Of a DNA stretch of 64,000 nt, positions 27,805 to 64,000 are shown in pieces. The first letter of the stretch is position 1. Every line of letters begins with the position of its first letter. The notes beneath the pieces are model-generated. The model was not told the origin of the DNA. It worked only from the letters and a program-made list of their open reading frames with translations, and ran no database searches. A program made the translations under genes and the position numbers. Location of the stretch: the IMG/VR virus record IMGVR_UViG_3300013094_000017, positions 62,001-126,000 of that record, one strand, 5' to 3'.

Positions 27805-28461
27805 TTAACTTCCGTTAGTTAGACTTTGAATTCTAACTGTGTAATCTATCTGTATCATTCTGTTCAATGCTTTTTGTACAGGATGGAAAATAACATGAGT
27901 TAGCAATGGGCCTGTATTAGCACCAGCTGAACTGTATCCTCGCAATCCTAACTCATCAAACACAAATGTACCGTCTTGGTTTACGCTGGTGTCAAACGCT
28001 GCTTGACCACTTGGTTCGCCAAAGTCCAATAAGCAAGTAACTAATACATCCGAATAAGGTGTACCAGGTACATGACGAACTTCCATAAAGTTCCTAGATG
28101 GGTCAACATCATACGGACTTTGACCATCTACTATTTTGTAATATTGTTGGTTGTATAAGGCTGCATTAGATCCAACAGTGTTTGGTGTCAAATATGTAAT
28201 AATGCCAGTTGGATCAACTCTACTACCACCGTTGCCAAATGCCATTTCAGAAATAAATCCACCGTTGTTTGAGATGCTGTTAGCCAATGCTATTGAAAAG
28301 TTTTCATAGTGAATAGCATTACGCTTGTCTACGAATACTTCCTTAGTCTCAGGATCATGTATTTTGATGTGTCCTTGGATACGTACTGTTCCCATTTCGT
28401 TAGGTTTTTTTGTATTATTTTCCATAGTTTCTTTCATCTTTTCAGTTTTAGACTTGTCCAT
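27805..28461 (-). CDS. virion structural protein
   Basis: 218 aa within the tail module; FDELGL...LTHVIFHPVQK; late-like GATAAATA at 28467-28474. Confidence 0.6.
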   Translation of the reverse strand: MDKSKTEKMKETMENNTKKPNEMGTVRIQGHIKIHDPETKEVFVDKRNAIHYENFSIALANSISNNGGFISEMAFGNGGSRVDPTGIITYLTPNTVGSNAALYNQQYYKIVDGQSPYDVDPSRNFMEVRHVPGTPYSDVLVTCLLDFGEPSGQAAFDTSVNQDGTFVFDELGLRGYSSAGANTGPLLTHVIFHPVQKALNRMIQIDYTVRIQSLTNGS

Positions 28462-34400: not shown

Positions 34401-37400
34401 ATTGTACCGTCTGCGCTACCGCAAATTGAAGCACCTACTCTATCACCTTGTGTATTTGATGGAGTTATTGTAATTGGGGAAGATTGTACTATCGTTGTAT
34501 CAGTTGACACAATCGACACATTATAAGCATATATCGCACCAGTTGAGGTATTTTGACCAGGTGCGCCAACTACTAATAATTTATTAGTTGAAGTAGTTTT
34601 GCTTACATATAATCCGGCACCGTATTCGCCAGGGTGAACGTTTGGATTTGTTATCACTGCACCAGTGCGGTGGATTTCACTTTTTGTAGTTCTGTTAATT
34701 CCAGAAATCTTTATTAAATCAACAGCAGGGGCGCCGGCAAATATAGAATCTGTTTCGATGTCATATATTAATGTTGCGCCAAAGTTTGTTGCTACAGATT
34801 TGCTGACTGTATTATTAACGATAGTATCATCAATACCATAATTTGTAATAGGAGTTAATATGTTATCTGAATATCCGTACACAAATATGCGACCATATCC
34901 GTACGATGCACCGTAATATCCTGTCGGAGCAGAAATTGCCACAATATTTGCAGTGTCTTGAGTAGCAACACGAGATCCAAATCCTTGACCAGTTATTGAT
35001 AGACTAGGAAGTGTTTCGGTAGATGTGCTATAATTGCTAGCTTTTTCATATACTGCCCATTTGCCAGAATTATCACTGTCAACCCAAACTAAATCACCGT
35101 TGTTAAATGATATTGTTTTTTCTAGTTCAGCAATATTATCAAATTGTGCAGCACGCACGCTAACAAATTTAAACATCAATGCCTGCACAGTTGAAGGATT
35201 CACTGAGGCTAATGTAGTTGATATTGTAAATGTTGTCAATGACGGAATAGTTTTAATTACATAAACTCCGTCTGACCCGTTGTCTAATCCGTGAATAGAT
35301 ACCACATCACCCACTGATAAATTATGGAATATATCAGTTGTAAATGTTAATTCTGACGATGGAATTGTTACAGCAGAATCGACTACTTTTGGTTTTTGAA
35401 TAGTATAGCGATACACATCCCATTCACCGTCATTGCGGAATCCTAACCAAATTGTATTGCCATCTTGGATGTTTCCATTGTTAGCAATATCAAGTAAACT
35501 GTTTGTATTATAAGCAGTAGCAGTTACATCATCAGTACGAACATATCCTGCCACAGGCATTATAATGTTGTTGTCGGCATAGGTAGATGGTGTTGTAGAA
35601 AACGCAGTGTCCGAAGTGTATGTATCACTTTCCATGGTTAAATCAGTAGGAACAATATATGATATTACATCATTTGGTAATACTGGCGCTGTATCCACAA
35701 ATTTAATAATCTGTGAATTTTCGCGGAAGTCTGCTTCACGTAGAGGAAACTCTAATTCATTATAAGAAACAAAATTACCATAATTACCAACACGGAATGC
35801 CCACTCTTCTTTATATTCAATTTGCCCTTGTAGGTTATGAATACTTGCTTTAGCTAATTTAGTAATAGCATTTTGTGTGCCTTTTTCTCGAATAAATCCT
35901 TGATAGAATTTATATTGTGCAATCGGATTAACAAAGATATTATCTAGATAAGTACGTGGTGTATAGCCAATCAAATGTTGTGCCATACGTTGCTGAGCAA
36001 CATCAAAGTTATCAATATCTAAACTATAGAAATCTTCAAACTGATTAATTTTATAATCAAAGTTTGGTAGTAATTGTGCTACTGGTTTAGATCCTAGTAA
36101 ATTCCAGCTGTTGAAATCAAAAGATGGTGCACCAGCAATATTAACATTAGCTGAATAGTAATTACCTACATACTTAACAATATCAGCAACTTGATAGTCA
36201 GTATACTGTGCCCAATCTGAAATCTGTGCATCATCGTAAACAAAGCCCGGACTTAGGAATTCTCCGTTCCAATCAGCAGTTCTAAATCCTGTCAATTTAA
36301 TACGACTTTGACGGTATCCTGTTTCAATGTCATATATAATATCATTAAACATACTTTTATTATTCATTACAATTGCATGTTCTTTTTGTACAAGATTTAA
36401 TCTAGCAAAGAATATTCCATCTGTTGTATTCTTAGTCTTAATAGTACATATACCACCTTCGCGGCTTAATGAAAAATTAGCTGCTGGAAATACCTGTCCA
36501 GTGGCTTTGATTAAACTATATTCATAGAAACTGTTAAGAACATTGTCAACTACAGCATCTGTAAATTGATACTTAATAACATCTGCAAAAGGACTTAAAG
36601 TGATTACTGAACCGTCTGCCCAGTTTTGTGTAGACCAATATAGAAATTCTTTTCCAGTGAAATTCCAATCAATGACTTGATTTAGATCAGCATTGTATTC
36701 ATCAAATATAAATCCCTGTGACATTAGCCACTGACCATATCCCATTATTAAATCATATACCTGTTGAATAGTACTATATTGTGTGCCGTATGGTACTATT
36801 GTTTCTGCCGGATCGTACTGTTTAGTAACTAGAACCGATGCTCCGCCTACTGTAGACAGTTGTTTAATTGCGGCATAATATGTTGAAGTAAATGTTGCTC
36901 CAGAATTATGACTGCTGATTACTCTATAATAAACATTGCTATAGAATACAACCTGTCCTGCTTGATAGAATGAATTAGCAGTCCAAACTAAGAATGTTTC
37001 TGATTTGCCACCAACTGTGATCGCACTACCATTTGCCTGATGCAAAGGTTGATTAATAGTAAAATACGGATAGCGTTTATCATATCCCTTAACTGCAAAA
37101 TAACCGTTCTTTTTCTCTACAATAATTCCAGATATTGCAGCAGATTTAACAGGGGTACTTACATTGAAATGCAAGGTGTAATCTTCGTTAGGTAGTAATA
37201 CTCCAGGATTTGCTGTGTTAGGACTGATAGAATCAATTGTGATTTCTAATTTATCTTTACTTAAGAATCCGCCTGCTTTGTAAAATAAATTAAGATTAAC
37301 TGATGCTAGATCATTCTTAAGAGTGGTTAGATAATTTGAATTACGTTGACGACCATTTTCAATTAGCCAAACACTGTATCCCGATGCTAGAATAATATTA

Positions 37401-40400
37401 CCGTTAGAATCTGTATCAGTGTATAACAACATTTCTGATGGGTTTAAGAATGTTTCATTTGCACCGTAGTTATATTGTCCGGTAATATCCAATTCCATTC
37501 TGCTGGTATCAAACATCATTGCGGCATAGTCAGCTGGCTTGGTTAATGCCATGATAATCTGCATGGCAAATGGCCAAGCACTAGAACGTCTCCATGCTGT
37601 TTCAGCAGGACCGTGATCGCCAAATGCCCAGTCTTGTTCAGTATTCATTATAGAATCATTTAGAGCAATACCTGCCCAGTTACGTATATCAATAATATTT
37701 CCGCTATCATCAACTGGAATGGCCTGACTCAATCCAGGACGAGCATAGGTTGGATCTACAACGATTCCAGATGGAAAACGTTTAATACCTGCTTCAAGAT
37801 CTTGCCATAGGTTTAAGTTACCAGCAGTATACGGTGCGGCACCATATTCTGCATCCCACCATGTTGGTTTAATTGTAAACCCAAGCATTTCCCAAGGGCA
37901 GGTGTCTGGACGATCTGTATCAAAATACAATTTGTAAATTGCACGCCAGTTACCAGGTAATGCATTACCTAATACCAGATCACTGACAGATTTGTAATTG
38001 TATGTCTTATGATTGTTTACATCATACGTACTATTTGTAGCAAAGTCTATTCCGTAGATACTTGCCCACTTCAAGAAATCGCCCTGTACAAGATTATAAA
38101 TTTCAGCATAGTTATATTCCGAATTTCTAAATACGTTTGGCAATAGATCGTGAATATCTAAAAGATTTGAATCGTAAGTTACCTTTAAATTATTGTAGAT
38201 TCTTGTTTCATATTCTAATAATGCTAGATCGCGATAATCATCTGCTTCGTTGTAAGCAGAAAATGCCACTGTTAAACTTCCATCGTGGCCTTGGATAACT
38301 TTTTGCGGACCATTGGCATAGGTGTTATCAATATAAATTTGTGGTTCATATTTTGGGAATAGACCTAATTTAGTCGGTGTAGGCGGAATGTATGATCCTA
38401 CTGTAGATACATAATCTTTAATTGTGATTACATCACCTTTGTTTAATGCTGTGATGATATTCACTCCAGATTCGTATGCTGGAAAATTATAATCTTTACC
38501 ATATACTAATTGTTTGGTTACACCGTTAGAAGTAAGATATACTAATACAGATCGATCACTCAGTGCAGTCGCTGAAAACGCAGAAGTAATCGAATAATGT
38601 GTGTTGCGAGAATCAGTTACTGTATAAGTGCTGGTAATATTATTATTGCCGTAGCCTAACATATCGCTATGAGCATAAGGGAATGACGAATTCTTATTTG
38701 AATTCATTTCAGTTAACGCTTGATCTAACACTTGAACTGGCATTGTATTGCCAGGTGCTTTGGTAATAAAATTAATTAGATTTAATCTAAATTGATAGTA
38801 ATCGTCAGATGCTTTTCTTGTAGCATTAATTAAATTATGTTCAGCATCGGTTATAAAGCATTGAGCAAATGTTAGTGGATTTTGATTACTAATTAATCTA
38901 GATCCATATTTTGTAATATTAGGTAAACTCTTTAGATTGCTACCATTATATTCCGGATCAGCATCAGTCATTGATGTAACGTGATCTGTTAATTCTGTAA
39001 GTGTGAAACTTGATATAAATCCGTTCAAAGGATTATTGGTTAAATTAATTGGTGTTTCATACACCCCAGTGCTATTAGGACTAGATGCAGAATAACATTT
39101 AAACAATACACGCACTGGTGTAGAGGTTCCATCTAATGCAGTGGTAAATGTTACGAATAATTTCTTACCACTAGTAGTAAGTGTATAATCGGTTCCTGCT
39201 TGTTGTTTGGTATTATTAACAAATACAGATACCGCTAGATCAGATATACTAGTTGGATTATCAAATACAGTAACTTCAATACTAGATTGTACGGTGGTAA
39301 TAACTTGGAACTGTTCCACAGGGATAAGATATTCTGCACCAGCAGTCCACGCATTTTCATAAACAGGTGTGCTATTGTTAATGCGAATGTATGTTTCTAC
39401 AGTAGGAATAGTAGTGGTAGTTCCTACTAGTGTAATTGTGTCATTATTTAGATAATTGTCAAATAAGTAGGTACCAACTGTACTAATACTTTCGGATGTG
39501 TATTGTAATGGAAAGCCTAGAATAGAATCCGCTGTGCCTGAGCCTACCGCATATCCAAATATTTGATTACCATAAAAGTCAGAATTGTAATATGTTGGAT
39601 CGCTATAACTATGGCCGTTTTCATCAAACAGATCAAATAACGGTGCTTGATTTATTGCAGTACGTTGTTGACCTTTAATCCAGATAGTGCCATTGTAATA
39701 CCAAGATGTTCCTTCATTTACTGTGCCTGATTTAACAACAACCGCATCACTCTTAGAAGGAGATAATATCTCAGTTAATCTTGTTTTTTGTTTTCCATTA
39801 AATGTTGCAATGTTAACTTGGAAAATCTTTCCCTGCACCATTGGATCAGGATCAGCATTGAAAATAACCTTGTTGCCATCTTCTAATAATACACCATCGA
39901 TATAATATCCGTATGTACCTTCTATGATAGAAAATGCATCAGTGGTTACTTCGTCAATGAAATCAACTGTATCAATAGCTGTTGAACCAAAATTCCAAAG
40001 CTGGATATCTGGTTTGAATTCAATAATAGGACGGGCACCGCGTTTATCTGCAGGATAGTTTGCGGTAGTCCCATTAGCTGCTGCTGAGGCTGTTATTACA
40101 TCAGTATGTACCCAACGATTATATCTTGACCAAGGATTTAAGTCTTTGCTTGCTTTGTTGATTGTGATATAATCAGGTGTCTCTGGAATATTCTTAAAGT
40201 TGTCAAACGGAAAATCATCAAAAGGTGTTCCGTCAAAATTTGTATCATAGGTTGTATTAAGATTTAACGGAGTTGTTAATTTAGTAAAATCAACTAGACG
40301 AATTCCCGAGCCAATGCCTTCTACAATATATTCGTTATTAGCATAAGTTGACGGAGTTACATTGCCAACAAATTTCACTTTCATCCCATTGATAAATTCA

Positions 40401-41260
40401 ACACCGTTTCCTGATTTGTATTGTAATTTTCCAATAATATCAGCATCAACATCAAGTGAAGAATTTTCTACGATAGATTTCACTAGAATACGTCCGCTGG
40501 CCAATTGATTGTCGCCGGCTGCATAGAACAACACGCTAGGTGTTTGTTCATCTATAGTGATAATAATCTGTCCTTTGCTGGTGCCGTTGCCTGTTACACC
40601 GTGAGTATATTGTGATCCTGCCCCATCAGTAGGCTCTGTCTTAATATATAATTTATGGTTAGAATTAATATTAAACACATAGGTGATACCTCTATAGAAT
40701 GTTAACATAGGATCAGGTGTTAGTCCGTCCGGAGTAAACACAAAGAAATTATCATCTGCTGAATCAGTTATAGTGTATGTGCTAACTGCATTTTTTTGTA
40801 GACCGGCAATAGAAATTGCGTCAGGCCCGTTTGGTAACCAATAGTAGTCACGGAAGTTAATAAATTTATCCCAATCAATATGTGGGTCATATGAATTAAA
40901 TTTAGGACGGAACAATCTATCAAGATTATCCACATTACCACCATAGTAACTTATCTGATTAACTAAGTCGTCAAATCCGTAGGCTGCTTTAATACTTTGA
41001 TCAATATTCTTTAATATTACCGCAGGCTCTAGTTGATAGTTTTCACGCACCGGTAATGATTCCGGAATATAAACATCAGTTGATGGATTATAATTAGGAC
41101 TTAATTTACTGCCCACAAATCCATCTATTCGTTCCAGCGAAGGAACTTTAATTAGTTGGTCAAGTGTGCTTGATAAGAATTTATTATTCTTATCTGTTCT
41201 GAAAAAAGCAGGTAATAAATTTGCTGATTTTCTAATATTCTTTGATGTGTTGTTAGCCAT
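28448..41260 (-). CDS. giant baseplate wedge protein (gp7 position)
   Basis: 4270-aa uninterrupted ORF directly after gp6; beta-propeller-like repeats, G-GY...P repeats and EVKPYHTKIR. Confidence 0.65.
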   Translation of the reverse strand: MANNTSKNIRKSANLLPAFFRTDKNNKFLSSTLDQLIKVPSLERIDGFVGSKLSPNYNPSTDVYIPESLPVRENYQLEPAVILKNIDQSIKAAYGFDDLVNQISYYGGNVDNLDRLFRPKFNSYDPHIDWDKFINFRDYYWLPNGPDAISIAGLQKNAVSTYTITDSADDNFFVFTPDGLTPDPMLTFYRGITYVFNINSNHKLYIKTEPTDGAGSQYTHGVTGNGTSKGQIIITIDEQTPSVLFYAAGDNQLASGRILVKSIVENSSLDVDADIIGKLQYKSGNGVEFINGMKVKFVGNVTPSTYANNEYIVEGIGSGIRLVDFTKLTTPLNLNTTYDTNFDGTPFDDFPFDNFKNIPETPDYITINKASKDLNPWSRYNRWVHTDVITASAAANGTTANYPADKRGARPIIEFKPDIQLWNFGSTAIDTVDFIDEVTTDAFSIIEGTYGYYIDGVLLEDGNKVIFNADPDPMVQGKIFQVNIATFNGKQKTRLTEILSPSKSDAVVVKSGTVNEGTSWYYNGTIWIKGQQRTAINQAPLFDLFDENGHSYSDPTYYNSDFYGNQIFGYAVGSGTADSILGFPLQYTSESISTVGTYLFDNYLNNDTITLVGTTTTIPTVETYIRINNSTPVYENAWTAGAEYLIPVEQFQVITTVQSSIEVTVFDNPTSISDLAVSVFVNNTKQQAGTDYTLTTSGKKLFVTFTTALDGTSTPVRVLFKCYSASSPNSTGVYETPINLTNNPLNGFISSFTLTELTDHVTSMTDADPEYNGSNLKSLPNITKYGSRLISNQNPLTFAQCFITDAEHNLINATRKASDDYYQFRLNLINFITKAPGNTMPVQVLDQALTEMNSNKNSSFPYAHSDMLGYGNNNITSTYTVTDSRNTHYSITSAFSATALSDRSVLVYLTSNGVTKQLVYGKDYNFPAYESGVNIITALNKGDVITIKDYVSTVGSYIPPTPTKLGLFPKYEPQIYIDNTYANGPQKVIQGHDGSLTVAFSAYNEADDYRDLALLEYETRIYNNLKVTYDSNLLDIHDLLPNVFRNSEYNYAEIYNLVQGDFLKWASIYGIDFATNSTYDVNNHKTYNYKSVSDLVLGNALPGNWRAIYKLYFDTDRPDTCPWEMLGFTIKPTWWDAEYGAAPYTAGNLNLWQDLEAGIKRFPSGIVVDPTYARPGLSQAIPVDDSGNIIDIRNWAGIALNDSIMNTEQDWAFGDHGPAETAWRRSSAWPFAMQIIMALTKPADYAAMMFDTSRMELDITGQYNYGANETFLNPSEMLLYTDTDSNGNIILASGYSVWLIENGRQRNSNYLTTLKNDLASVNLNLFYKAGGFLSKDKLEITIDSISPNTANPGVLLPNEDYTLHFNVSTPVKSAAISGIIVEKKNGYFAVKGYDKRYPYFTINQPLHQANGSAITVGGKSETFLVWTANSFYQAGQVVFYSNVYYRVISSHNSGATFTSTYYAAIKQLSTVGGASVLVTKQYDPAETIVPYGTQYSTIQQVYDLIMGYGQWLMSQGFIFDEYNADLNQVIDWNFTGKEFLYWSTQNWADGSVITLSPFADVIKYQFTDAVVDNVLNSFYEYSLIKATGQVFPAANFSLSREGGICTIKTKNTTDGIFFARLNLVQKEHAIVMNNKSMFNDIIYDIETGYRQSRIKLTGFRTADWNGEFLSPGFVYDDAQISDWAQYTDYQVADIVKYVGNYYSANVNIAGAPSFDFNSWNLLGSKPVAQLLPNFDYKINQFEDFYSLDIDNFDVAQQRMAQHLIGYTPRTYLDNIFVNPIAQYKFYQGFIREKGTQNAITKLAKASIHNLQGQIEYKEEWAFRVGNYGNFVSYNELEFPLREADFRENSQIIKFVDTAPVLPNDVISYIVPTDLTMESDTYTSDTAFSTTPSTYADNNIIMPVAGYVRTDDVTATAYNTNSLLDIANNGNIQDGNTIWLGFRNDGEWDVYRYTIQKPKVVDSAVTIPSSELTFTTDIFHNLSVGDVVSIHGLDNGSDGVYVIKTIPSLTTFTISTTLASVNPSTVQALMFKFVSVRAAQFDNIAELEKTISFNNGDLVWVDSDNSGKWAVYEKASNYSTSTETLPSLSITGQGFGSRVATQDTANIVAISAPTGYYGASYGYGRIFVYGYSDNILTPITNYGIDDTIVNNTVSKSVATNFGATLIYDIETDSIFAGAPAVDLIKISGINRTTKSEIHRTGAVITNPNVHPGEYGAGLYVSKTTSTNKLLVVGAPGQNTSTGAIYAYNVSIVSTDTTIVQSSPITITPSNTQGDRVGASICGSADGTMVAISAPGTNGNIGGVYVYSTATSGTTNLVQAQFISAPSVCKTGDRFGSTVLMSDDGTYLFVASTSVNDGKTNVGKVFIYKQNTATQYVLNQTLDNPSTDVNLNFGQALAIDDLGQLLTVTGHGDNKFIDITFDKGATTLDNGTCHFGDTAKGSGAVYVFNRYNDKFIYAEELFDDNVLNIDPATGSPVANSQYGNSVAVNNGTVLVGTPGKFVSNSTIGSAYVFAKKDVTINSWNVYRSQDDLVDLSKVKRAITIDTLSQQVLDYLDIVDPAKGRIVGIADQEVRYKTAFDPAVYSIGVQGVVVDTNTSWIEDHLGELWWDLSTVKYTWYEQSDLEYRKNSWGTLFPGASIDVYEWVSSEYLPSQWSSLADTVDGLAKGISGQPKYADNSVISVKQYYNATTGGTTNVYFYWVKNKVTIPAADFRKISANDVANLIYNPSAYGMKYISVLAADSIAVTNVTSTLSQNNIYLNIAEDDIDNDINQHTEWMLLADGDVNSMPNALLEKKLMDSLLGRDSLGNPVPDPSLSDRIKYGVSIRPRQGLFKDRIGALRNAIDYTNTVLSQNIVTDVINFTNLNSKDPIPDVETGLYDQQVDNEQALYEITTIYFKQAAVSCQITDGRVTGVSIEDPGYGYLIAPTIAVLNDTSGIVISTEIDSVGRVVSTTIVNSGYGYTETPILVVRPYTVIVTVDATSGNRWAEYQWYNNQWNRSHTQDYDTTLFWDYVDWQATSFDPLKPLVTTVDQPYLLATISPSTGDYVKVNNQGNGRYIILAKVDSNGTFDDAYDLVYSEKGTIQFKESLWNTTDSTYNFDYLYTFDQTLYDQSAESELENVLLAIKEDIFVGPLKVYWNKFFFKAVRYAMSEQIFLDWAFKTAFINVSNLAGPLDQRSVFKFQNSEYYEDYLNEVKPYHTKIRNFQVVYDVVEPTQSYTTDFDLPAIYDNITDTFVPIELGDASLNVYPRKGWADNYKYTVGSIIVADGGGTYTSVPNVQIIPAAGDTITDPATAIAYISLGKVIEIEVTNPGSGYTQTPTVVLTGGGSTGVVQARAYAQLANGKVRTNKIDIRFDRVTGLREIGNKQAADQFFCDGSTYQFPLSWAAENKKSEIEITLDGIKIFALDYDIVTYTQVSNGYHKLYSTLVLTSVPNKGQILDITYNKNINLYHAADRIQDYYAPTDGMPGADPAQVMTGVDYPGTQIQTLPFAYTSNWDMLPFTEAAWDDGGNGEASLDTIIDGGDLAYTMATGLNPEDLIVDGDQFLSPNVSHGPEELVPGEVVESVGISVYTRVPSGSPMISQNTFLVSTTTTSTTVSLSMLPANTSSLMVSYNRGILNYGTDYTIDFNNNTITISTQTSTGVVAVTNVGIGGAAYSSYDYATSTKSSITVPVGVPLADIGSLYVTLNGNPITSDQYKLNGKGVTVSGLTGTNTLQVWVFEAAYKGYSEVKDQIFVTSSATTAYTLTQYPGVIGPINAQAIVELNKLRLIPPNTAYYSAAANQTVFEIDPNSNYPAGVFSLGALQVFVNGIQIQNGADFILDQPNKLIVFRPGILKTGDAVAITNTVYSQYYFDNGQIILNTNRLAIPEGGILKVTTYTNQDSDMIRTEVFTSGTLRRYTMNRAVLNDNYVWVTINGTPLTNGLDYYIDTDNKTVVVDDNYPIQSTDTIVVMSMTDVSDNTVIAYRQFKDILNRTTFKRISETNSTNLAEPLYTTSTTIVVDEASDLSVPNPAKNAPGVILIAGERIEYMAMSGNTLSRLKRATLGTGARDGYPVGTEVLDQGVRQIMPYTETVNVSTAVVPSPLDIAYVIENMTNTKGNGIVFNTSTASVHQVRVYQGGIPLRKDGMYVHDMSVLYDNVTATIVGTISTSTALPNTTVIGNAYLVTSTNQVWVYTNSLDLSAVNGFVYQGLNYLPPEFTITSSGTNNVLTLNVPAGRLNTGTAITLVQQTAKDWYASTATSLLNDTGAVATFLRDRQAALPDKYHYGQV

Positions 41261-56486: not shown

Positions 56487-56511
56487 TAGATTGTTTATAA
56501 ATACATATATA

Positions 56512-57306
56512 ATGTCAAACACTGTTACTTCTTTTGTCTATTGGATACATCTGCAATCGCATCAAGATATGCTGCTACAAGGATACATTGGAGTTTCAAT
56601 TAATCCAGAAATTCGATTAAATGATCACAAGAGCGAATCTACCAAATTAAATCCTATTAATCCTGTGTTAGCTAGTGCTTTTAAAAAATATTCAACTCAG
56701 ATTATTCAAGATATTGTATTTACGGGGTCAAACACCGAATGTTATGCTTTTGAAGAGCGTATTCGCCCCACCCCACACATAGGATGGAATATCAATAAGG
56801 GCGGAGTATGCCCTCCTTCACAAAAAGGAAAGCATCGGTCGGCATTAACAAAAGAAAAAATAAAAAATAATAGCTTAAAGCAGGGAACAAATAGAACAAT
56901 AGAGTATGTTAAAACCCATCAAGATGTTATTTACAAGGTGTTATCTATGATCTTAGAAAGAAATCGATGTGTTACTATTTTAAGAGAAACTGGAATAACT
57001 CGAGATTTATATAACAAAATTAAAAAAAAATATCTAACATATATTGAGTTATTAAACACCCATACCGATTATACTTTAATAGCAGACCATATTAAAAAAA
57101 CAAACGGAATGCAGCAAAAGGTATTTTCTGATAAAAAAGAGCTTTTAATAGAATTATATAGATTAATAAATCTCAATATTAAACGAAAAATTATTCTATC
57201 TGAATTGGGCATCTCTCCTGCATTTTATGGGAGATTTAGAAACAAAGAGTTAGAATTTATATCGTATTACAACTCACAATCTACTACCGGCGGTGATACA
57301 CAATGA
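56512..57306 (+). CDS. GIY-YIG homing endonuclease
   Basis: VYWI...GYIGVS...R..H, GWNI..GG, NUMOD3-like KGKHRS..TKEKI, HTH-like tail; TATAAATA at 56496-56503. Confidence 0.82.
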   Translation: MSNTVTSFVYWIHLQSHQDMLLQGYIGVSINPEIRLNDHKSESTKLNPINPVLASAFKKYSTQIIQDIVFTGSNTECYAFEERIRPTPHIGWNINKGGVCPPSQKGKHRSALTKEKIKNNSLKQGTNRTIEYVKTHQDVIYKVLSMILERNRCVTILRETGITRDLYNKIKKKYLTYIELLNTHTDYTLIADHIKKTNGMQQKVFSDKKELLIELYRLINLNIKRKIILSELGISPAFYGRFRNKELEFISYYNSQSTTGGDTQ

Positions 57307-57550: not shown

Positions 57551-57745
57551 ATGAGTTCAACCCAAGCAATCCAAGACGCAGTAGTAGCATTCGTAGCAGA
57601 AGACGCAAAGTTCACAGCAGGTAATTCAGCAGCAGGTACTCGCGCTCGTAAAGAGTTAGCTGAGTTAGGCAAGTTAGTTAAAGCTCGTCGCAATGAAATT
57701 ACCGCAGAAAAAAACGCTCGTAAAGAAGCTAAAGCTGCCAAGTAA
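57551..57745 (+). CDS. histone H1-like (Hc1 family) nucleoid protein
   Basis: KF.AGNSAAGTRARK.L.EL.K....R and a Lys/Ala tail; highly biased codons. Confidence 0.8.
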   Translation: MSSTQAIQDAVVAFVAEDAKFTAGNSAAGTRARKELAELGKLVKARRNEITAEKNARKEAKAAK

Positions 57746-57748
57746 TAG

Positions 57749-58195
57749 ATGTCTTGGACGTATCAAGGCATATTAGTCGAAACGCTACCTGAAGATTGTG
57801 TTGGTTATGTATATCTTATAACCTGCATACCTTCGGGGCGCAAGTATATTGGTAAGAAGCTGGCTAAGTTTGCAAAGACTTCTTACAAAACAGTAACATT
57901 AAAAAATGGTACTAAGAAAAAGAAAAAGATCCGCAGCAAGATTGACAGCGACTGGCAAGAATATTTTGGATCTAGTGTAGAGTTATCTGCTGATGTCTTA
58001 ACATTAGGGGTTGACCAGTTCACTCGAGAAATATTATACTACTGTAAGTCAAAAGCAGAATGTAGCTATCTTGAAGCACGCGAACAGTTTGAAAGAAAAG
58101 TTTTAGAATCCTCTGATTATTACAATGGTATAATCAGTTGTAAGATACATCAATCACACATTAAAAATTTAGACACCAAGTCACACTCCTACTAG
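57749..58195 (+). CDS. compact GIY-YIG-like nuclease
   Basis: GYVYLIT...RKYIGKK, YFGSS, FTREIL, YLEAREQ, YYN. Confidence 0.75.
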   Translation: MSWTYQGILVETLPEDCVGYVYLITCIPSGRKYIGKKLAKFAKTSYKTVTLKNGTKKKKKIRSKIDSDWQEYFGSSVELSADVLTLGVDQFTREILYYCKSKAECSYLEAREQFERKVLESSDYYNGIISCKIHQSHIKNLDTKSHSY

Positions 58196-58233
58196 AAAAC
58201 ACCAGCTAACGCAGTAAAATACAGTATAGACTA

Positions 58234-58657
58234 GCACCGGTAAATTTCGGGTGCCTTTAACCTGGATCTAAGATCTCAGGGGCGGAAATCTTTGCGCTGT
58301 ACAGAGTACTCAACCACTACCGAAAGATGAAGATCAGATATGCCTACACTAACTGATTTGGTTGTTTGAACAGGATAAATTAAAGGCTAAAAGAAGGGAG
58401 AAAAACCCTACGTTTGTGTGTATGTTTACGTATATACACAAGCCGCCGTCGTTATAAAGACGCAGCTCGAGGTACCGGACGACCGCCTCTGTAATGCTGT
58501 AACGTGAAGTGATTGCGATACTCAGATAATGCAATTTATGATCTTTGCCCGCCCTGGGCAAAGAGTGACCACTTAATCTAGATAATATCTTATGTCTTTC
58601 TTCGAAAGAAAAATTGCTCTGAGTGTTAACGAAAGAGCAAATGAGCGCAAGCTCATT
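58234..58657 (+). ncRNA. candidate large structured non-coding RNA (or structured DNA element)
   Basis: At least ten nested or tandem stem-loops across a ~500-nt intergenic gap; G-U pairs and a GCAA tetraloop favour the + strand. Confidence 0.6.
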
Positions 58658-58663
58658 ATAACA

Positions 58664-58671
58664 CATAAATA
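58664..58671 (+). promoter_or_regulatory. late promoter
   Basis: CATAAATA upstream of the gene at 58700. Confidence 0.55.
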
Positions 58672-58699
58672 AATTCATATTACCTATTAGGAATCGGAT

Positions 58700-59452
58700 A
58701 TGAGAATCGAAGAATTATTAGCTGAACAACAATTAGATGAGTTAGGTTGGAAGAATGGTACTCCCACAAATGATGATGGAACTCCTTTACCTAAGAGTGG
58801 TATTGCTCAGGGTGTAAACAAAGTAGCTGGTGGTATAGGTAAAGCTGTAGGAGGAGTTGCAGGTGCATGGCAAGCTGCTAAACAAGGATATCAAACAGGT
58901 AAAGCTGCTGTATCAGGGCAAGGATCAAATACTCCCACGCAACCTAATGCCCCTGCTGGTCAAGGATCTAATGTAACTACTGGTAATCAAACCTCACAAG
59001 GTGATACCCAAACAGTTGGTACTACTAAAACTGTAGGACAAACACAAACAACTCCCCAACCTAACACTGCAACTGCGCCTAGTGCGCCTGCTGGTCAAGA
59101 ACCTGCACCACCTGCTAATACAGCACAAGCTGATCAACAGGCTAAAGTTGGAGTAGGTCAAATCAATAAGATTATTCCCGGATTACGTACTCGTGATCTA
59201 CAAAGTCTTAAGAAAACTATTGATCAACGTATGCAAGCAATGAATAAAACTCCTAATCCTACTGGACAACAAACTCCTAATCAAGGTAATCAAACAGTGA
59301 CCGCTGCTAATACTGTAGCAAATGCACCTGCAGGACAACAATCTAATGTGGGTAAATTTTCTGGACAACCGGCGAATGTAACACAAGGCAATCCGTTAGC
59401 AATGGCAGAAAGCGCAGAATTCTACAGCAAGTTCCTAGGAAAGAATATTTAA
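58700..59452 (+). CDS. low-complexity protein, probable internal head/virion protein
   Basis: Late promoter, MRIEELLAE..LDE start, Gln/Thr/Pro-rich. Confidence 0.6.
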   Translation: MRIEELLAEQQLDELGWKNGTPTNDDGTPLPKSGIAQGVNKVAGGIGKAVGGVAGAWQAAKQGYQTGKAAVSGQGSNTPTQPNAPAGQGSNVTTGNQTSQGDTQTVGTTKTVGQTQTTPQPNTATAPSAPAGQEPAPPANTAQADQQAKVGVGQINKIIPGLRTRDLQSLKKTIDQRMQAMNKTPNPTGQQTPNQGNQTVTAANTVANAPAGQQSNVGKFSGQPANVTQGNPLAMAESAEFYSKFLGKNI

Positions 59453-60694
59453 ATGAGAATGTCGCAAATTATCAGCGAGTCGTATCTATACGAAGGGTTA
59501 GATAACAGTGCTACTCACACTATGCGTCTATGGGAAAATGCCGGTCGTAAGATTGTAGAAGCAAACTTAGACGCAGCAACTATTCAAAAAATATTCACAG
59601 CAGCAGAACAAGGTGCAAGTGCAGGTGGTGATAATCGTACCTTACTTGGCCTAGGTAAAGATGCTGCTACCGCTGTAAAATCAGCCTATGACGATCTAGT
59701 AAGCAAAGTACAAAATAGTGGCCCAATTAACGGCATTGATGCCAAATACGATCTGGCTGCTGAAAAATTAAAAGCTGCTACTGGTGGTGATCAAGGTGTG
59801 ATGAAGTATGTACAAAAGTATAGAGACTTTGCTAAAGCACACCCTATTGCACAAAGTTTAATCTATTCAGCATTAATAGCAGCCGCAGGTATTAGTGGTG
59901 CAGGAGCAGGTGGCGCAGCAGCACTAGGCTTGCTAAAAATGACCGACAAATTATTACAAGGTGAGAAATTTAGTACCTCAGTTGGTAAAGGTTTAGCCAC
60001 AGGCGGTATGGCATTTGCAGCTAGTAAGTTAGGTGATCTAATCAAAGGAGTTAAACCTGGCGAACAAGTTCCTCCACCAAGTGCAGGTGCAGCAGGTAAT
60101 CCAAACTATTCTAAGCTCGATTTTGCTCATAACGATTATTATCTAAGTCCAAGAGGTGATATGACGGTAGCAGTGCCTAAAGGATACGGTAGTCCTTGGC
60201 AAGAAGGAACAAAAGCGTTTGATATTCGCCAACAATTAGCAAATGCTAATTCAGCAAACGAAAGCATCAATTTATCTAAAGATGCCCTTGCAGAAGTGTT
60301 TGCCGCAGTTACAGTTAATATGATTAACGAAGGATTGTGGGATGCTGTTAAATCTAAAGTAGGCCAAGCAGCAGATGCAGTAGCAAGTAAAGCACAGCAA
60401 GTTGGTCAAAACTTAACTAACAAAGTTACAGCAGACAAGCTAAACAGTGCATGGCAAGCAGCAGGATCGCCTACCGATAGTGAACAGGTTAAACAGGTGT
60501 TAATCAATGCAGGTGTACCTGAAAATGTTGTTGCAGATGTTTATAAACAAATGAAGATTACTTCAGGTAACGATCGACCTAAATTAACTGTTAAACAGAT
60601 TAATCAAATTATTCTTAAATTAAGATTAAGAGATTTACAAAGTCTACAAAAATTTGTTAATGCTGCATTACAACAGCGAACAAAAACTTCTTAG
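59453..60694 (+). CDS. Ala-rich probable internal head/virion protein
   Basis: MRMSQIISE..LYEG start, internal INEG; shares the LR.RDLQSL motif with the upstream gene. Confidence 0.6.
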   Translation: MRMSQIISESYLYEGLDNSATHTMRLWENAGRKIVEANLDAATIQKIFTAAEQGASAGGDNRTLLGLGKDAATAVKSAYDDLVSKVQNSGPINGIDAKYDLAAEKLKAATGGDQGVMKYVQKYRDFAKAHPIAQSLIYSALIAAAGISGAGAGGAAALGLLKMTDKLLQGEKFSTSVGKGLATGGMAFAASKLGDLIKGVKPGEQVPPPSAGAAGNPNYSKLDFAHNDYYLSPRGDMTVAVPKGYGSPWQEGTKAFDIRQQLANANSANESINLSKDALAEVFAAVTVNMINEGLWDAVKSKVGQAADAVASKAQQVGQNLTNKVTADKLNSAWQAAGSPTDSEQVKQVLINAGVPENVVADVYKQMKITSGNDRPKLTVKQINQIILKLRLRDLQSLQKFVNAALQQRTKTS

Positions 60695-61827: not shown

Positions 61828-61853
61828 TACATACATAACTCAAGGATTTAGCA

Positions 61854-64000
61854 ATGGCTAATGTAACAGGACAAATTGGACAAGAATCGGTAGTATTAGA
61901 AAACGCAGCCACAGAAGCTACGCTAAAACTACTATTACAAGCAGCTCTAGCCACTACCAAAGCACAAAAAGATGCGGTTAAAGATCTTGCTACTAAAGTA
62001 ATCGGTGATCCTGCTAAAGTTGAAGAATTTAATCAAGAGGTAAGTAAATCCGGAGGAGTTATAAGAACTACTGCTGGAGCTTTTGGCGGGCTTACTGCGG
62101 CTGGACAACAACTACAAGTTGGGTTTAACAAAACTGTTGACGTTGTAAGCAAATTAGTATCAGGAACAAACCAAGCAAGTGATGTGTTTGGTGCTATGAA
62201 AAATTTACCTCTCGGTATAGGATTAGTAGCCTCTGGATTTGAAATATTAGCAAAATATCAAGAACAACAATTAAAAGCATATCAATCGATGTCATCAGCA
62301 GGAGTAAACTTTGGTGGCAGCTTAAATGCAATGAAACTAGCTAGTTTAGAGTATGGAATGACCATGGAACAATTCTCTAATGTGATGAAAGAGAATGGTA
62401 AAGCATTTGCATTAATGGGCCCAACAGTTGAAGCTGGAAAAAATCAATTCTTAAAAATGAATAAGGAATTGATTAACGGTGATATAGGATTACAATTAAA
62501 AAATCTAGGATTAACCGCTGAGGATATATCAAACGGATTTGCAGGATTTATACAAATGCAAGGTGGGTTAGGTGCTACTCAGATTAAAGATCAAAAAGCA
62601 TTAGAAGAATCATTTCATAATTATACAAACGAATTAGATATGATGACTCGATTAACAGGTGAAACAAGAAAAGAACAACAAGATGCACAAGCCCAACTTA
62701 AAAATGATGCAGTCTTCCAAAATGAATTAAGCAAACTAGTTGCCTCTGGAAAAATAAACGAGGCAAATCAACTTAAATTCTTAGGTGAACAAGCTAAAAT
62801 AAAAGGTGCCGGAGCTTTTGATAATCTCATCGGCACGTTAACCAATACTCAACCAGTGACTGCTGCAGGAAGAGCATGGGCAGGGGTTCAGAGTGAACAA
62901 ACTAGGTTACAAGGGGAATCTGTTAAATTAGCTCTTGAAGGAAAATTAAATAGTCAACAAGCAGTTAAAAGCCAGTTAGAACAACAGGCTGCGATGGCAA
63001 AAACAACTACTGCGTTCGGAGCATCAGCTTCGGTAAACGCTAGAATGAATAATGAATACACAGAAGCGATGACTGCTGGGTTAAAAGCCGAATCAAATGT
63101 TAGATTGAAAGGGCTTAATACCCAAGAAGGTATAAACGCTGCAATGGTTGCGGCACAAAAAGAACAAGAAGATATTGCAAAAAAAGCCACAGAAGTTAAA
63201 GCCGCTAATGAACGACAAGAGGAAATGGCAAAACTATCTCAACATATAATGGAAACTTTAATCCCTATCATTAATCAAGCATTACCTCAAATGAACAAAT
63301 TTATTCAAGGATTTAGTGATGCAGTAAGTTGGATGAGTAAGAATGCTAATACATTAAAGTTGATAGGTGAATCTTTATTAGCAGCGTATGTTACTGCTAA
63401 AGCAGTTCAAGGAGCAAAAGCCGCATATGGAGTCGGATCTAAAGTAGCAGAATTTATTGGAGGTGGTAAAGGTGCCGCAGGAGTAGCAGAAGGAGCAATA
63501 TCAAAAGGACCGTTAGCCGCAGTTGAAGGCGCAGCAGGTGGTGGCGGAGGTATAGCAGGATTTATACGCAGCATGGGTATGGCATTAGCAGCACTTGGTC
63601 CCGAGGCTCCGTTAATTGCAGCCGGTGCAGCCGCAGTTGGAGCAGCTATAACATTAATCGGCGCAGGCATTGCAGGTGCAACATGGTTAATGGGCAAAGC
63701 ATTACCGTCACTAGCCTCAGGATTAAAAGCGTTTGGAGATATTGACGGAGTTAATTTAATCAAAGTAGGCGCAGGAATTGCAGCACTTGGATTAGGATTA
63801 GGAGCATTCGGTGCAGGCAGTGCATTAGCCGGTGCAGGCGGAGTAATTGAAGGATTAACATCTGGACTTGGTAAGTTATTTGGTGCTAAGAGTCCTATTG
63901 ACAAGATTAAAGAATATGCTGCATTAGGTCCAAGTTTAGAAAAATCTGGTATAGGTATAATGAAATTTAACACAGGATTAGCACAACTACTAGCCACCGA
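61854..64000 (+). CDS. tape measure protein (partial, runs off the window)
   Basis: ATG after AAGGA; MANVTGQIGQESVVLENAATEATL...; frame open at all positions checked up to the window end; Ala/Gly-rich helical and hydrophobic segments. Absent from the ORF track, presumably because there is no stop in the window. Confidence 0.8.
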   Translation, partial: MANVTGQIGQESVVLENAATEATLKLLLQAALATTKAQKDAVKDLATKVIGDPAKVEEFNQEVSKSGGVIRTTAGAFGGLTAAGQQLQVGFNKTVDVVSKLVSGTNQASDVFGAMKNLPLGIGLVASGFEILAKYQEQQLKAYQSMSSAGVNFGGSLNAMKLASLEYGMTMEQFSNVMKENGKAFALMGPTVEAGKNQFLKMNKELINGDIGLQLKNLGLTAEDISNGFAGFIQMQGGLGATQIKDQKALEESFHNYTNELDMMTRLTGETRKEQQDAQAQLKNDAVFQNELSKLVASGKINEANQLKFLGEQAKIKGAGAFDNLIGTLTNTQPVTAAGRAWAGVQSEQTRLQGESVKLALEGKLNSQQAVKSQLEQQAAMAKTTTAFGASASVNARMNNEYTEAMTAGLKAESNVRLKGLNTQEGINAAMVAAQKEQEDIAKKATEVKAANERQEEMAKLSQHIMETLIPIINQALPQMNKFIQGFSDAVSWMSKNANTLKLIGESLLAAYVTAKAVQGAKAAYGVGSKVAEFIGGGKGAAGVAEGAISKGPLAAVEGAAGGGGGIAGFIRSMGMALAALGPEAPLIAAGAAAVGAAITLIGAGIAGATWLMGKALPSLASGLKAFGDIDGVNLIKVGAGIAALGLGLGAFGAGSALAGAGGVIEGLTSGLGKLFGAKSPIDKIKEYAALGPSLEKSGIGIMKFNTGLAQLLAT

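What the first reader, a model, noticed from the sequence alone, without database searches (positions are those of the whole stretch)
58196..58699. ~430-nt densely structured non-coding element behind a histone-like protein and a compact GIY-YIG nuclease
Seen: this is the largest gap in an otherwise tightly packed genome, and it is almost entirely paired. Helices: GCACC/GGTGC (58234-58254); CCTG-GATC/GATC-CAGG (58261-58280); CTTTG/CAGAG; CAACCA/TGGTTG enclosing ATCAG/CTGAT (58311-58364); AGGG/CCCT; ACGT(T)/(A)ACGT (58410/58501) closing a multibranch domain of TTGTGTGTATG/TATATACACAA, CGTC/GACG and nested CAGC-GAGG-CGG/CCG-CCTC-GCTG; AAGTG/CACTT enclosing TCTTTGCCC/GGGCAAAGA; then TCTTTC/GAAAGA, TTGCTCT/AGAGCAA and AATGAGC-GCAA-GCTCATT. 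AGATAAT recurs at about 58524 and 58580. G-U pairs and the GNRA loop point to a + strand RNA co-oriented with Hc1 and GIY-YIG. It does not look like tRNA, tmRNA, RNase P RNA or an intron. Inference: an undescribed large phage ncRNA, possibly the RNA partner of the 148-aa GIY-YIG protein, which lacks the DNA-binding tail of normal homing enzymes. Alternatively a structured replication or packaging site.
Basis: partly seen in the sequence, partly recalled or inferred. Interest (0 to 1): 0.85.

Follow-up and report, generated by a model that had tools for sequence, protein, structure and literature searches.

The report
Large structured RNA beyond Polynucleobacter-1
The gap holds a real ~440-nt, multiply pseudoknotted RNA whose first third is the known orphan motif Polynucleobacter-1; the rest is undescribed, recurs in hundreds of uncultured freshwater phages and in bacterial islands, and displays two 7-nt boxes that always mutate together.

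Summary
Window 58196-58699 is the largest non-coding gap, and it encodes a + strand structured RNA of about 440 nt (58221-58657).

Novelty is only partial. Positions 58229-58367 match Rfam RF01718 (Polynucleobacter-1, 104 bits against a cut-off of 37), an orphan motif from 2010. The remaining ~300 nt match no Rfam family.

Over 100 IMG/VR phage contigs conserve both parts. Helices are 92-100% canonical with many compensatory changes, and three pseudoknots are supported. G-U pairs outnumber A-C by 752 to 214.

The most conserved module is two direct-repeat units flanking a hairpin. Each ends in a 7-nt box (AGAUAAU at 58524-30 and 58580-86). The boxes are identical in 99 of 102 RNAs, although the box changed about 33 times on the tree. 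No complementary partner was found in cis.

In phages the RNA almost always follows the Hc1-like and compact GIY-YIG genes. That protein family also occurs in hundreds of cultured phages; the four loci examined lack the RNA. The RNA also occurs in Comamonadaceae-type bacterial islands without GIY-YIG.

Best reading: an autonomous, modular, trans-acting RNA that presents two identical recognition boxes. A dedicated GIY-YIG ribonucleoprotein is not supported.

The parts
57551..57745 (+). Hc1-like (histone H1-like) 64-aa gene, first gene of the conserved Hc1 / GIY-YIG / RNA cassette
   Evidence: PF07432, E 2e-12. A tblastn homologue lies about 198 nt upstream of the GIY-YIG start in at least 98 related loci.
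57749..58195 (+). Compact, domain-only GIY-YIG protein (148 aa). It belongs to phrog_447 and to the cyanophage group 'T4-LIKE GC 213', often mislabelled 'NAD synthetase'.
   Evidence: PF19835 SegE_GIY-YIG, profile 1-123 of 123, E 2e-30. phrog_447, E 1e-35. Conserved residues among 90 homologues include Y22, Y33, G35, R93, E109, E120 and N126. There are 478 cultured-phage homologues below 60% identity.
58221..58367 (+). 5' domain, equal to the Polynucleobacter-1 RNA (helices P1-P5) plus a 5' extension. The extension forms pseudoknot PK1 (58221-25 with the P3 loop 58296-300). A 2-bp contact 58230-31:58240-41 is also supported.
   Evidence: RF01718 at 58229-58367, 104.2 bits, cut-off 37. PK1 is 97% canonical; pair 58221:58300 reads AU46/GC21/UA21. 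P1, P2, P4 and P5 are 94-100% canonical.
58368..58394 (+). A-rich junction between the domains, with the conserved AAGGC-AAAA segment
   Evidence: Conserved columns in alignment A1. No covarying partner was found.
58395..58508 (+). Central pseudoknotted domain. It holds P6 (58395-98:58406-09), P7 (58412-23:58432-43), PK2 (P7 loop 58425-30 with 58503-08), PK3 (58448-51:58480-83), P10 (58463-66:58496-99) and P11 (58470-72:58486-88). The core GGUACCGG-N-ACCGCC is invariant.
   Evidence: MI and helix statistics: PK2 96%, PK3 96%, P7 92% (12 of 12 pairs compensatory), P10 97%, P11 96%. No Rfam family matches; the weak cow-rumen-2 hit (20.6 bits) does not recur in relatives.
58509..58535 (+). Repeat unit 1: GUGAU, spacer 1, ACUC, then box 1 (AGAUAAU, 58524-58530). 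Box 1 sits in the loop of a local hairpin (P12b) in which spacer 1 pairs with the linker after the box (58512-16:58531-35).
   Evidence: Box listing. Native duplex energy of spacer 1 with the linker beats all 500 permutations. Identity covariation with box 2.
58542..58564 (+). Hairpin P13 between the two repeat units
   Evidence: Nine pairs, 81% canonical, G-U 68 against A-C 17. It is present in all RNA variants.
58565..58586 (+). Repeat unit 2: GUGAC, a hypervariable 6-nt spacer 2 (58570-75), AUCU, then box 2 (AGAUAAU, 58580-58586). It is predicted single-stranded.
   Evidence: Box 1 equals box 2 in 99 of 102 RNAs. Joint parsimony changes number 19, 10, 5 and 6 at the four variable positions. 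Spacer 2 has no internal partner.
58595..58609 (+). Variable hairpin P14, of variable sequence and often with a UUCG-type loop in relatives
   Evidence: Alignment A1; only 52% canonical in the fixed-column test because length and sequence vary.
58614..58657 (+). 3' hairpins. P15 (58615-20:58634-39) has a GA/GAA internal loop and an inner 2-bp stem. P16 (58640-46:58651-57) has a GCAA loop and is the probable 3' boundary.
   Evidence: P15 86% and P16 94% canonical, with 6 of 6 and 7 of 7 pairs compensatory. Equivalent hairpins occur in the bacterial-type RNA.
58664..58671 (+). CATAAATA, which resembles the T4 late promoter TATAAATA and probably serves the downstream gene. This is an inference.
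   Evidence: A conserved ATAAAT-A block lies just 3' of P16 in A1. The consensus is from established T4 knowledge; it was not tested.
58700..59452 (+). Downstream 250-aa low-complexity gene. It is a syntenic neighbour, not part of the RNA.
   Evidence: Homologues start about 420-470 nt after the motif in most loci.

Best explanation
The gap encodes one modular, + strand non-coding RNA of about 440 nt (58221-58657).

Its parts, in order:
- a 5' domain that is the known Polynucleobacter-1 motif, extended by a pseudoknot;
- a central double-pseudoknot domain;
- a presentation module, in which two direct-repeat units flank a hairpin;
- two 3' hairpins.

Each repeat unit reads GUGAY, spacer, A(C)UC(U), then a 7-nt box.

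Shown here:
- the fold, its strand, and its conservation in phages and in bacterial islands;
- that the two boxes are kept identical through dozens of independent substitutions;
- that box 1 lies in a hairpin loop and that box 2 and its spacer have no internal partner.

Inferred:
- In the phage the RNA is transcribed with, or just after, the Hc1-like and GIY-YIG genes, and it ends at P16.
- It acts in trans. The rigid pseudoknotted scaffold presents two identical single-stranded boxes. These bind two copies of one sequence, or one two-fold partner, encoded elsewhere in the phage or host.
- Box changes therefore re-programme specificity and must occur in both copies.
- The RNA works independently of the GIY-YIG protein. 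Their adjacency in phages is conserved synteny.
For: - Family match: RF01718 at 104 bits.
- Conservation: 106 of 119 motif-selected viral loci conserve both domains, with the 3' part 72-80% identical over about 300 nt.
- Covariation: RNAalifold finds 41 of 74 pairs with compensatory changes. MI-APC and the helix tests give 92-100% canonical pairs against 0-60% in slid controls, and G-U 752 against A-C 214.
- Boxes: identical in 99 of 102 RNAs, with about 33 box changes on a tree built without the box columns. Joint changes equal single-column changes.
- The same rule holds in two other phage RNA architectures (boxes ACAUGAA and GGAUGAU). It also holds in the bacterial type, where UCGAA, GCGAA and CCAAA covary identically.
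- No complementary partner lies inside the element or within several kb.
- Independence from GIY-YIG: bacterial copies lack it and are linked to DUF6641 instead, in 46 of 49 loci. Cultured-phage GIY-YIG homologues lack the RNA.
- In bacteria the RNA stands divergent from its neighbour gene, so it cannot be that gene's UTR.
Against: - No transcript data exist, so the ends are inferred.
- The trans partner is unidentified. The one candidate in the window failed a conservation test.
- In phages the RNA follows GIY-YIG in essentially every case with upstream sequence. A functional link cannot be excluded.
- No robust covarying helix ties the 5' domain to the 3' domain, and the 5' domain is swapped in variants B and C. 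The element could be two adjacent RNAs.
- Identity of the boxes could reflect a dimeric protein rather than base pairing.
Confidence: 0.5

Rival explanations
1. The RNA is a GIY-YIG ribonucleoprotein. It supplies the nucleic-acid recognition that the domain-only GIY-YIG nuclease lacks. Boxes and spacer 2 act as guide segments for RNA-directed cleavage or homing.
For: - Near-absolute adjacency in phages: 101 of 118 motif loci have the homologue ending 31-64 nt upstream. Every true RNA with upstream sequence has it, except L070.
- About 70 of 80 protein-selected loci carry at least part of the RNA.
- Three different RNA architectures all sit behind this gene.
- The protein is catalytic-domain only, with conserved catalytic-type residues.
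- Variable, unpaired, guide-like segments exist.
- Precedent: the single-domain GIY-YIG nuclease SsnA recognises structured repeats beside its gene (PMC11893778).
Against: - There are 478 cultured-phage homologues. Melnitz, phiM12, ACP17 and P-SSM7 have no gap and no RNA.
- Close relatives (about 75% identical) have a membrane-protein ORF directly after the gene and no RNA module in the locus.
- The complete RNA exists in bacteria without GIY-YIG.
- No protein residue covaries with the boxes above the level of control RNA columns.
Confidence: 0.15
2. The RNA is a precursor that is cut at the two identical boxes, by itself or by a host or phage endoribonuclease. Cutting releases a ~56-nt small RNA centred on hairpin P13, in the way P1 c4 and P4 CI RNAs are matured.
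For: - Two identical single-stranded sites flank a conserved hairpin.
- The phage boxes fit an R-N-A-U pattern similar to RNase E preferences (from my own knowledge, not tested).
- The complex pseudoknotted scaffold is compatible with catalysis.
Against: - A fixed nuclease specificity does not explain why variable box positions must match each other.
- The bacterial boxes (AUCGAAA) do not fit the same pattern.
- No known self-cleaving ribozyme model matches.
Confidence: 0.12
3. The element is cis-regulatory or stabilising. It would be a 3' UTR of the GIY-YIG mRNA or a 5' leader of the downstream late gene.
For: - Weinberg 2010 rated the 5' motif as possibly cis-regulatory.
- It is co-oriented and abuts the GIY-YIG stop codon.
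Against: - In bacteria it is divergent from its only tightly linked gene.
- A late-promoter-like box lies 3' of the RNA, so the downstream gene probably starts after it (inference).
- Insertions of ORFs between GIY-YIG and the RNA are tolerated in L066, L259, L293, L306 and L308.
- A size of 440 nt and three pseudoknots are excessive for a UTR element.
Confidence: 0.1
4. The element is a DNA-level site. The two repeats would be iteron-like or recombination/packaging sites for a phage or island protein, and the RNA structure would be incidental.
For: - Direct repeats that co-vary in identity are typical of protein-binding or crossover sites.
- The bacterial copies lie in islands that often carry a tyrosine recombinase, in 36 of 70 loci.
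Against: - Compensatory changes run across about 20 helices and 3 pseudoknots, with a 3.5-fold G-U over A-C excess on the + strand.
- The box sequence, or its complement, does not recur at consistent positions in the flanks.
- The phage loci examined carry no tyrosine recombinase next to the RNA.
Confidence: 0.05

Closest known systems
Polynucleobacter-1 RNA motif (Rfam RF01718; Weinberg et al. 2010, PMC2864571)
   Same: Positions 58229-58367 match the whole 141-position model at 104 bits. The same P1-P5 helices are present. The same gene linkage was noted in 2010 (downstream of the GOS11034 family). The taxa agree: Burkholderiales and fresh water.
   Different: The Rfam model covers only about one third of the conserved RNA. 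It misses pseudoknot PK1, the central pseudoknotted domain, the two-box module and the 3' hairpins. In 2010 the motif had not been found in any phage genome; here it is in more than 100 viral contigs.
Large bacterial and phage ncRNAs of unknown function (GOLLD, ROOL, HEARO/omega RNA, OLE, raiA)
   Same: Size class of several hundred nt, many conserved helices and pseudoknots, occurrence in phages and mobile elements, and no known function.
   Different: No sequence or structure match to any of them (cmscan). None is known to me to carry two boxes that covary in identity.
IS110 bridge RNA / seekRNA (bispecific guide RNAs of DEDD recombinases)
   Same: A structured ncRNA of a mobile element with two separate recognition segments. 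In those RNAs the two segments must share a common core sequence because two DNA partners are joined.
   Different: No DEDD recombinase is present. The boxes here are 7 nt and fully identical, not a 2-nt core. No complementary donor or target sequence was found near the element. The neighbouring enzymes are a GIY-YIG nuclease or, in half the bacterial loci, a short tyrosine recombinase.
P1/P7 c4 antisense RNA with its a1b1/a2b2 target repeats, and P4 CI RNA
   Same: Phage immunity RNAs in which short repeated boxes in one transcript must keep matching sequences, and specificity changes by coordinated substitutions.
   Different: In those systems the complementary partner lies in the same transcript. 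Here none is found. The RNA is five times larger, and the Rfam c4 models do not match.
SsnA, a single-domain GIY-YIG nuclease that recognises hairpin repeats flanking its gene (PMC11893778)
   Same: A GIY-YIG protein with no extra DNA-binding domain, encoded next to a structured nucleic-acid element that bears a conserved sequence beside a hairpin.
   Different: SsnA belongs to a different GIY-YIG subfamily (cd10448, 94 aa). Its substrate is genomic ssDNA repeats present in many copies. Here there is a single-copy element with RNA-type covariation.

Membership tests
Rfam RF01718 Polynucleobacter-1 | Covariance-model score at or above the curated gathering score (37 bits) over the full model | tested here: met
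   104.2 bits, model positions 1-141 of 141, at 58229-58367 on the + strand. Relatives score 70-122 bits.
Rfam RF01718 Polynucleobacter-1 | The model's helices are kept by compensatory changes in homologues | tested here: met
   P1 100%, P2 94%, P3 96%, P4 99% and P5 99% canonical, each with 3-5 compensatory pairs.
SegE-type GIY-YIG nucleases (PF19835; phrog_447) | Full-length match to the catalytic-domain profile, with conserved GIY / YIG / Arg / Glu / Asn positions | tested here: met
   PF19835 at 105.8 bits, profile 1-123 of 123. Y22, Y33-G35, R93, E109/E120 and N126 are at least 97% conserved. Activity itself was not tested.
Free-standing homing endonuclease (Seg-like) | A C-terminal DNA-binding domain, and sporadic presence or absence among close relatives | tested here: not met
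   The protein ends about 20 aa after the catalytic domain. The gene is present in at least 585 viral contigs and 478 cultured phage records as a conserved syntenic gene.
RNA-guided nuclease system (omega RNA or CRISPR type) | Obligate co-occurrence of the effector protein and its RNA | tested here: not met
   The protein occurs without the RNA. The RNA occurs without the protein.
RNA-guided nuclease system (omega RNA or CRISPR type) | A variable guide segment complementary to a nucleic-acid target | tested here: inconclusive
   Variable unpaired segments exist (boxes and spacer 2). No target was found in the flanks or in the 64-kb window. The one candidate failed a conservation test.
IS110 bridge RNA | Encoded next to a DEDD (RuvC-like) / Tnp recombinase, with loops complementary to the element ends | tested here: not met
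   Neighbours are Hc1-like and GIY-YIG genes (phage), or DUF6641 with or without a tyrosine recombinase (bacteria). No complementary sites lie nearby.
Group I / group II intron, RNase P RNA, tmRNA, tRNA | A match to the family model, and flanking exons for introns | tested here: not met
   No cmscan hit even at E up to 10. ARAGORN finds nothing. The flanking ORFs are separate complete genes.
Type III toxin-antitoxin antitoxin RNA | Tandem, fully identical ~34-36-nt repeats directly upstream of an endoribonuclease toxin gene | tested here: not met
   Only 7-12 nt of each unit are identical, the spacers differ, and no such toxin gene is adjacent.
Protein-coding gene on either strand | A conserved open frame | tested here: not met
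   Indels that are not multiples of three occur throughout A1. The 109-aa - strand ORF at 58349-58678 is not kept in relatives.

The most novel reading that the evidence does not exclude
The RNA is a programmable, two-site guide scaffold used by mobile elements. Its two identical 7-nt boxes, with differing flanks, would pair with the shared core of two DNA (or RNA) partners. It would then recruit catalytic-domain-only enzymes that lack their own binding domains. These are the GIY-YIG nuclease in phages and the ~190-aa tyrosine recombinase, which aligns only to the C-terminal half of Xer profiles, in bacterial islands. This would be a new class of RNA-guided DNA cutting or joining system.
Probability: 0.1. 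Interest if true: 0.95.

Novelty: new variant of a known kind. Interest (0 to 1): 0.7.

Why it matters
Classes of large, highly structured bacterial and phage RNAs are few, and several turned out to be ribozymes, guide RNAs or RNA cages.

This work turns a 141-nt orphan motif into a roughly 440-590-nt modular RNA shared by abundant freshwater phages and by islands of their likely Burkholderiales hosts. It corrects the RNA's boundaries and adds three covariation-supported pseudoknots.

It also exposes an unusual evolutionary signature. Two boxes, 56 nt apart, changed together at least 40 times. That signature defines a specificity determinant that can be tested directly by mutating one box, both boxes, or swapping boxes between variants. 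It also gives a sequence handle for finding the partner.

If the partner is DNA and the neighbouring minimal nuclease or recombinase is recruited, the RNA would define a new RNA-guided system. If not, it is still a new large phage-host RNA that needs a function.

Tried and rejected
1. Other Rfam families for the 3' part. The only candidate was a weak cow-rumen-2 hit (20.6 bits). It did not recur in 15 relatives, so it is chance.
2. Cultured phages. blastn with the 2-kb region finds nothing. nhmmer on Melnitz, phiM12, ACP17 and P-SSM7 is negative.
3. A solved-structure relative of the GIY-YIG by sequence: none.
4. TAGATAAT as a genome-wide motif. The 22 copies are a codon effect (Leu-Asp-Asn) with no shared flanks.
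5. A cis partner for the boxes.
   - There is no position-specific reverse complement in the flanks.
   - The only internal site (UG-rich 58360-68) pairs equally well with foreign boxes.
   - Spacer 2 has no partner in 11 tested regions.
7. GIY-YIG residue against box covariation is within the range of control columns.
8. The candidate target at 33592-33609, inside the giant 4270-aa gene, has 11 contiguous complementary bases (chance expectation 0.09). It is not complementary in three other phages that carry both loci.
9. The wobble-partner idea, rc(box)-GGG-U, shows no enrichment in the window.
10. Hc1-like protein against DUF6641 as a shared protein partner: no similarity.
11. A sigma-70 promoter or intrinsic terminator for the RNA.
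   - The scans are at background level, and P16 lacks a U-run on the + strand.
   - A consensus search for a bacterial promoter was inconclusive.
12. The genome contigs pattern scan gave 117 chance hits out of 120. Only three were true.

Full report
**Observation.** The 504-nt gap at 58196-58699 lies between a 148-aa ORF and a 250-aa ORF, all on the + strand. It is the largest ORF-free stretch in the window. The only larger apparent gap is a + strand ORF that runs off the window end. Pfam confirms the neighbours. The upstream gene is Hc1-like (E 2e-12). The 148-aa ORF is a domain-only SegE-type GIY-YIG whose profile match spans residues 3-129; PHROGs files it in phrog_447, a family with a 148-position profile. 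The + strand folds at z = -3.5 against shuffles, the - strand at z = -1.55.

**Known part.** cmscan places Rfam RF01718, the Polynucleobacter-1 RNA, at 58229-58367. The match is full length at 104.2 bits against a cut-off of 37. Nothing else in the 64-kb window reaches a gathering score, and there are no tRNAs. The only paper in the library that mentions the motif is its 2010 description. That paper reports 16 sequences from fresh or estuarine water and one Polynucleobacter genome. It notes that most lie downstream of genes of family GOS11034, with possible homology to P-SSM2 gene 218, and that none was found in a sequenced phage.

- Two contigs (229 and 259 kb) are identical to the window.
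- In 101 of 118 loci a 141-148-aa homologue of the GIY-YIG ORF ends 31-64 nt upstream of the pattern.
- About 100 loci also conserve the 3' 330 nt at 72-80% identity, and 106 have both domains by nhmmer.
- RNAalifold on 52 non-redundant sequences found 74 pairs, 41 of them with compensatory double changes.
- An MI-APC analysis of 102 sequences, plus a helix-by-helix test, supports about 20 helices at 92-100% canonical pairing. Controls with slid partners give 0-60%. G-U pairs outnumber A-C by 752 to 214.

**Pseudoknots.** Three are supported, each at 96-97% canonical pairing with covariation:
- PK1, 58221-25 with the P3 loop. This extends the RNA 5' of the Rfam model.
- PK2, the P7 loop with 58503-08.
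- PK3, 58448-51 with 58480-83.

The closing helix at 58410/58501, the local CGTC/GACG hairpin and AAGTG/CACTT are not.

**The unusual feature.** The best-conserved module consists of two direct-repeat units flanking hairpin P13. Unit 1 reads GUGAY, spacer, ACUC, box. Unit 2 reads GUGAC, spacer, AUCU, box. In the window both boxes are AGAUAAU, at 58524-30 and 58580-86.
- Across 102 RNAs the two boxes are identical in 99. The box differs between RNAs: GGAUAAU, GCAUAAU, GAAUAAU, AGAUGAU, GGAUGAA and others.
- On a tree built without these columns the box changed about 33 times. At each variable position the joint change count (19, 10, 5, 6) equals the single-column count, so both copies changed on the same branches.
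- Box 1 lies in the loop of a hairpin, supported by a permutation test at 0 of 500.
- Spacer 2 is hypervariable and has no internal partner.
- No complementary sequence was found in the element, in several kb of flank, or in the window.
- One candidate inside the giant 4270-aa gene failed a conservation test in three other phages.

**Variants.** Behind the same GIY-YIG gene there are at least two other architectures.
- Variant B has a wholly different 5' and middle part of about 380 nt.
- Variant C has a different 5' domain but keeps the GGUACCGG...ACCGCC core.

Both keep the two-box module, with boxes ACAUGAA and GGAUGAU, and neither matches Rfam. A regular expression for the module has no hits in 1.7 Mb of unrelated DNA.

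**Linkage to GIY-YIG.** Starting from the protein, at least 585 viral contigs encode relatives. Of the best 80, about 70 carry the RNA or its module. Sometimes an ORF is inserted in between. Six have a ~380-aa membrane-protein ORF directly after the gene and no module.

The family is far wider than the RNA. There are 478 cultured phage records, mostly cyanophages (T4-LIKE GC 213). The closest is Methylophilales phage Melnitz at 49% identity. The four loci I examined have no gap and no RNA.

The converse also holds. True Polynucleobacter-1 hits in a Comamonadaceae MAG and in a contig binned as Nitrospira carry the whole RNA, including a two-box module, with no GIY-YIG. The copy in a Limnohabitans isolate is truncated. 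A 17-mer from that bacterial type hit at least 120 metagenome contigs, of which about 99 are true.
- Their boxes are AUCGAAA, AGCGAAA and ACCAAAA, again matching between the two units at the core positions.
- The RNA is divergent from a DUF6641 gene in 46 of 49 loci.
- It is followed in 36 of 70 loci by a ~190-aa tyrosine recombinase that aligns only to the catalytic half of Xer profiles.
- No GIY-YIG residue covaries with the boxes beyond control columns.

**Interpretation.** The element is a genuine, modular, large ncRNA.
- The double dissociation from GIY-YIG argues against a dedicated ribonucleoprotein, although the synteny in phages is striking.
- The divergent orientation in bacteria argues against a purely cis-regulatory role.
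- The strand-specific covariation argues against a DNA site.

The identity constraint on two exposed boxes is best explained by recognition of one external partner at two sites. That partner could be two copies of a sequence or a two-fold symmetric molecule. This step is inference, and the partner is unknown.

The most novel reading still open is a two-site guide that recruits the neighbouring catalytic-domain-only nuclease or recombinase.

**Context.** The phage is a distant T4-like jumbo phage. Its gp46-like protein is 47-48% identical to those of Sinorhizobium phage Phosso and Pseudomonas phage PA5oct. A late-promoter-like CATAAATA follows P16 (inference).

Noticed in passing
L253:2918-3400, L282:1435-1920 (also L259, L293, L273): Variant B. 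A different ~480-nt structured region follows the same GIY-YIG gene. It shares only the two-box module (box ACAUGAA) and the 3' hairpins with the window RNA, and it has no Rfam match. In L259, L293 and L273 a small ORF sits between the gene and the RNA.
   Followed up: partly
L248:2921-3330, L246, L295, L267: Variant C. The 5' domain is not Polynucleobacter-1. The GGUACCGGUCAACCGCC core and the two-box module (GGAUGAU or AGAUGAU) are kept.
   Followed up: partly
L153:1-830 (- strand), L178:4780-5300, L324-L443: A bacterial-type copy of the whole RNA lies in Comamonadaceae-like contigs and at least 99 freshwater metagenome contigs. It is divergent from a DUF6641 gene and is often followed by a ~190-aa catalytic-domain-only tyrosine recombinase, a ~260-aa ORF and a clamp-loader-like AAA+ protein. 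This looks like an island or satellite context.
   Followed up: partly
L238:3772-3960: In the Limnohabitans sp. Bal53 isolate the RNA is truncated just after P6. The sequence diverges from L153 at ...GGGGCCTAGC, which suggests a rearrangement breakpoint inside the RNA gene.
   Followed up: no
window 56491-57306 (+): A second, larger GIY-YIG-like ORF (271 aa; weak PF01541 hit, E 9e-4) lies between the gp46-like gene and the cassette. Homologues occur in only 4 related loci, which fits a sporadic free-standing homing endonuclease.
   Followed up: partly
window 58700-59452 and 59453-60694 (+): The two low-complexity proteins downstream share a C-terminal motif (INKIIPGLRTRDLQSLKK and INQIILKLRLRDLQSLQK). 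They have no Pfam or PHROG match. Homologues with similar N-termini follow the RNA in many loci.
   Followed up: no
window 28448-41260 (-): A giant 4270-aa ORF. Its mRNA has 11 contiguous bases complementary to unit 2 of the RNA at 33592-33609. This is not conserved in three other phages, so it is probably chance.
   Followed up: yes
window 61840-64000 (+): A long + strand ORF (at least 720 aa) runs off the window end. The ORF listing does not list it, so the region looks like a 1.2-kb gap.
   Followed up: yes
L306:1766-2950, L308, L066:12889-13902: ORFs of about 1 kb are inserted between the GIY-YIG gene and the RNA in some contigs. This shows that the two are separable transcription or insertion units.
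   Followed up: no
window 58456 and 58560: A further pair of columns covaries in identity (AA40/GG23/UU11). One lies in the PK3 loop region and the other in the 3' strand of P13. It is unexplained and could be an alignment effect or a tertiary contact.
   Followed up: no
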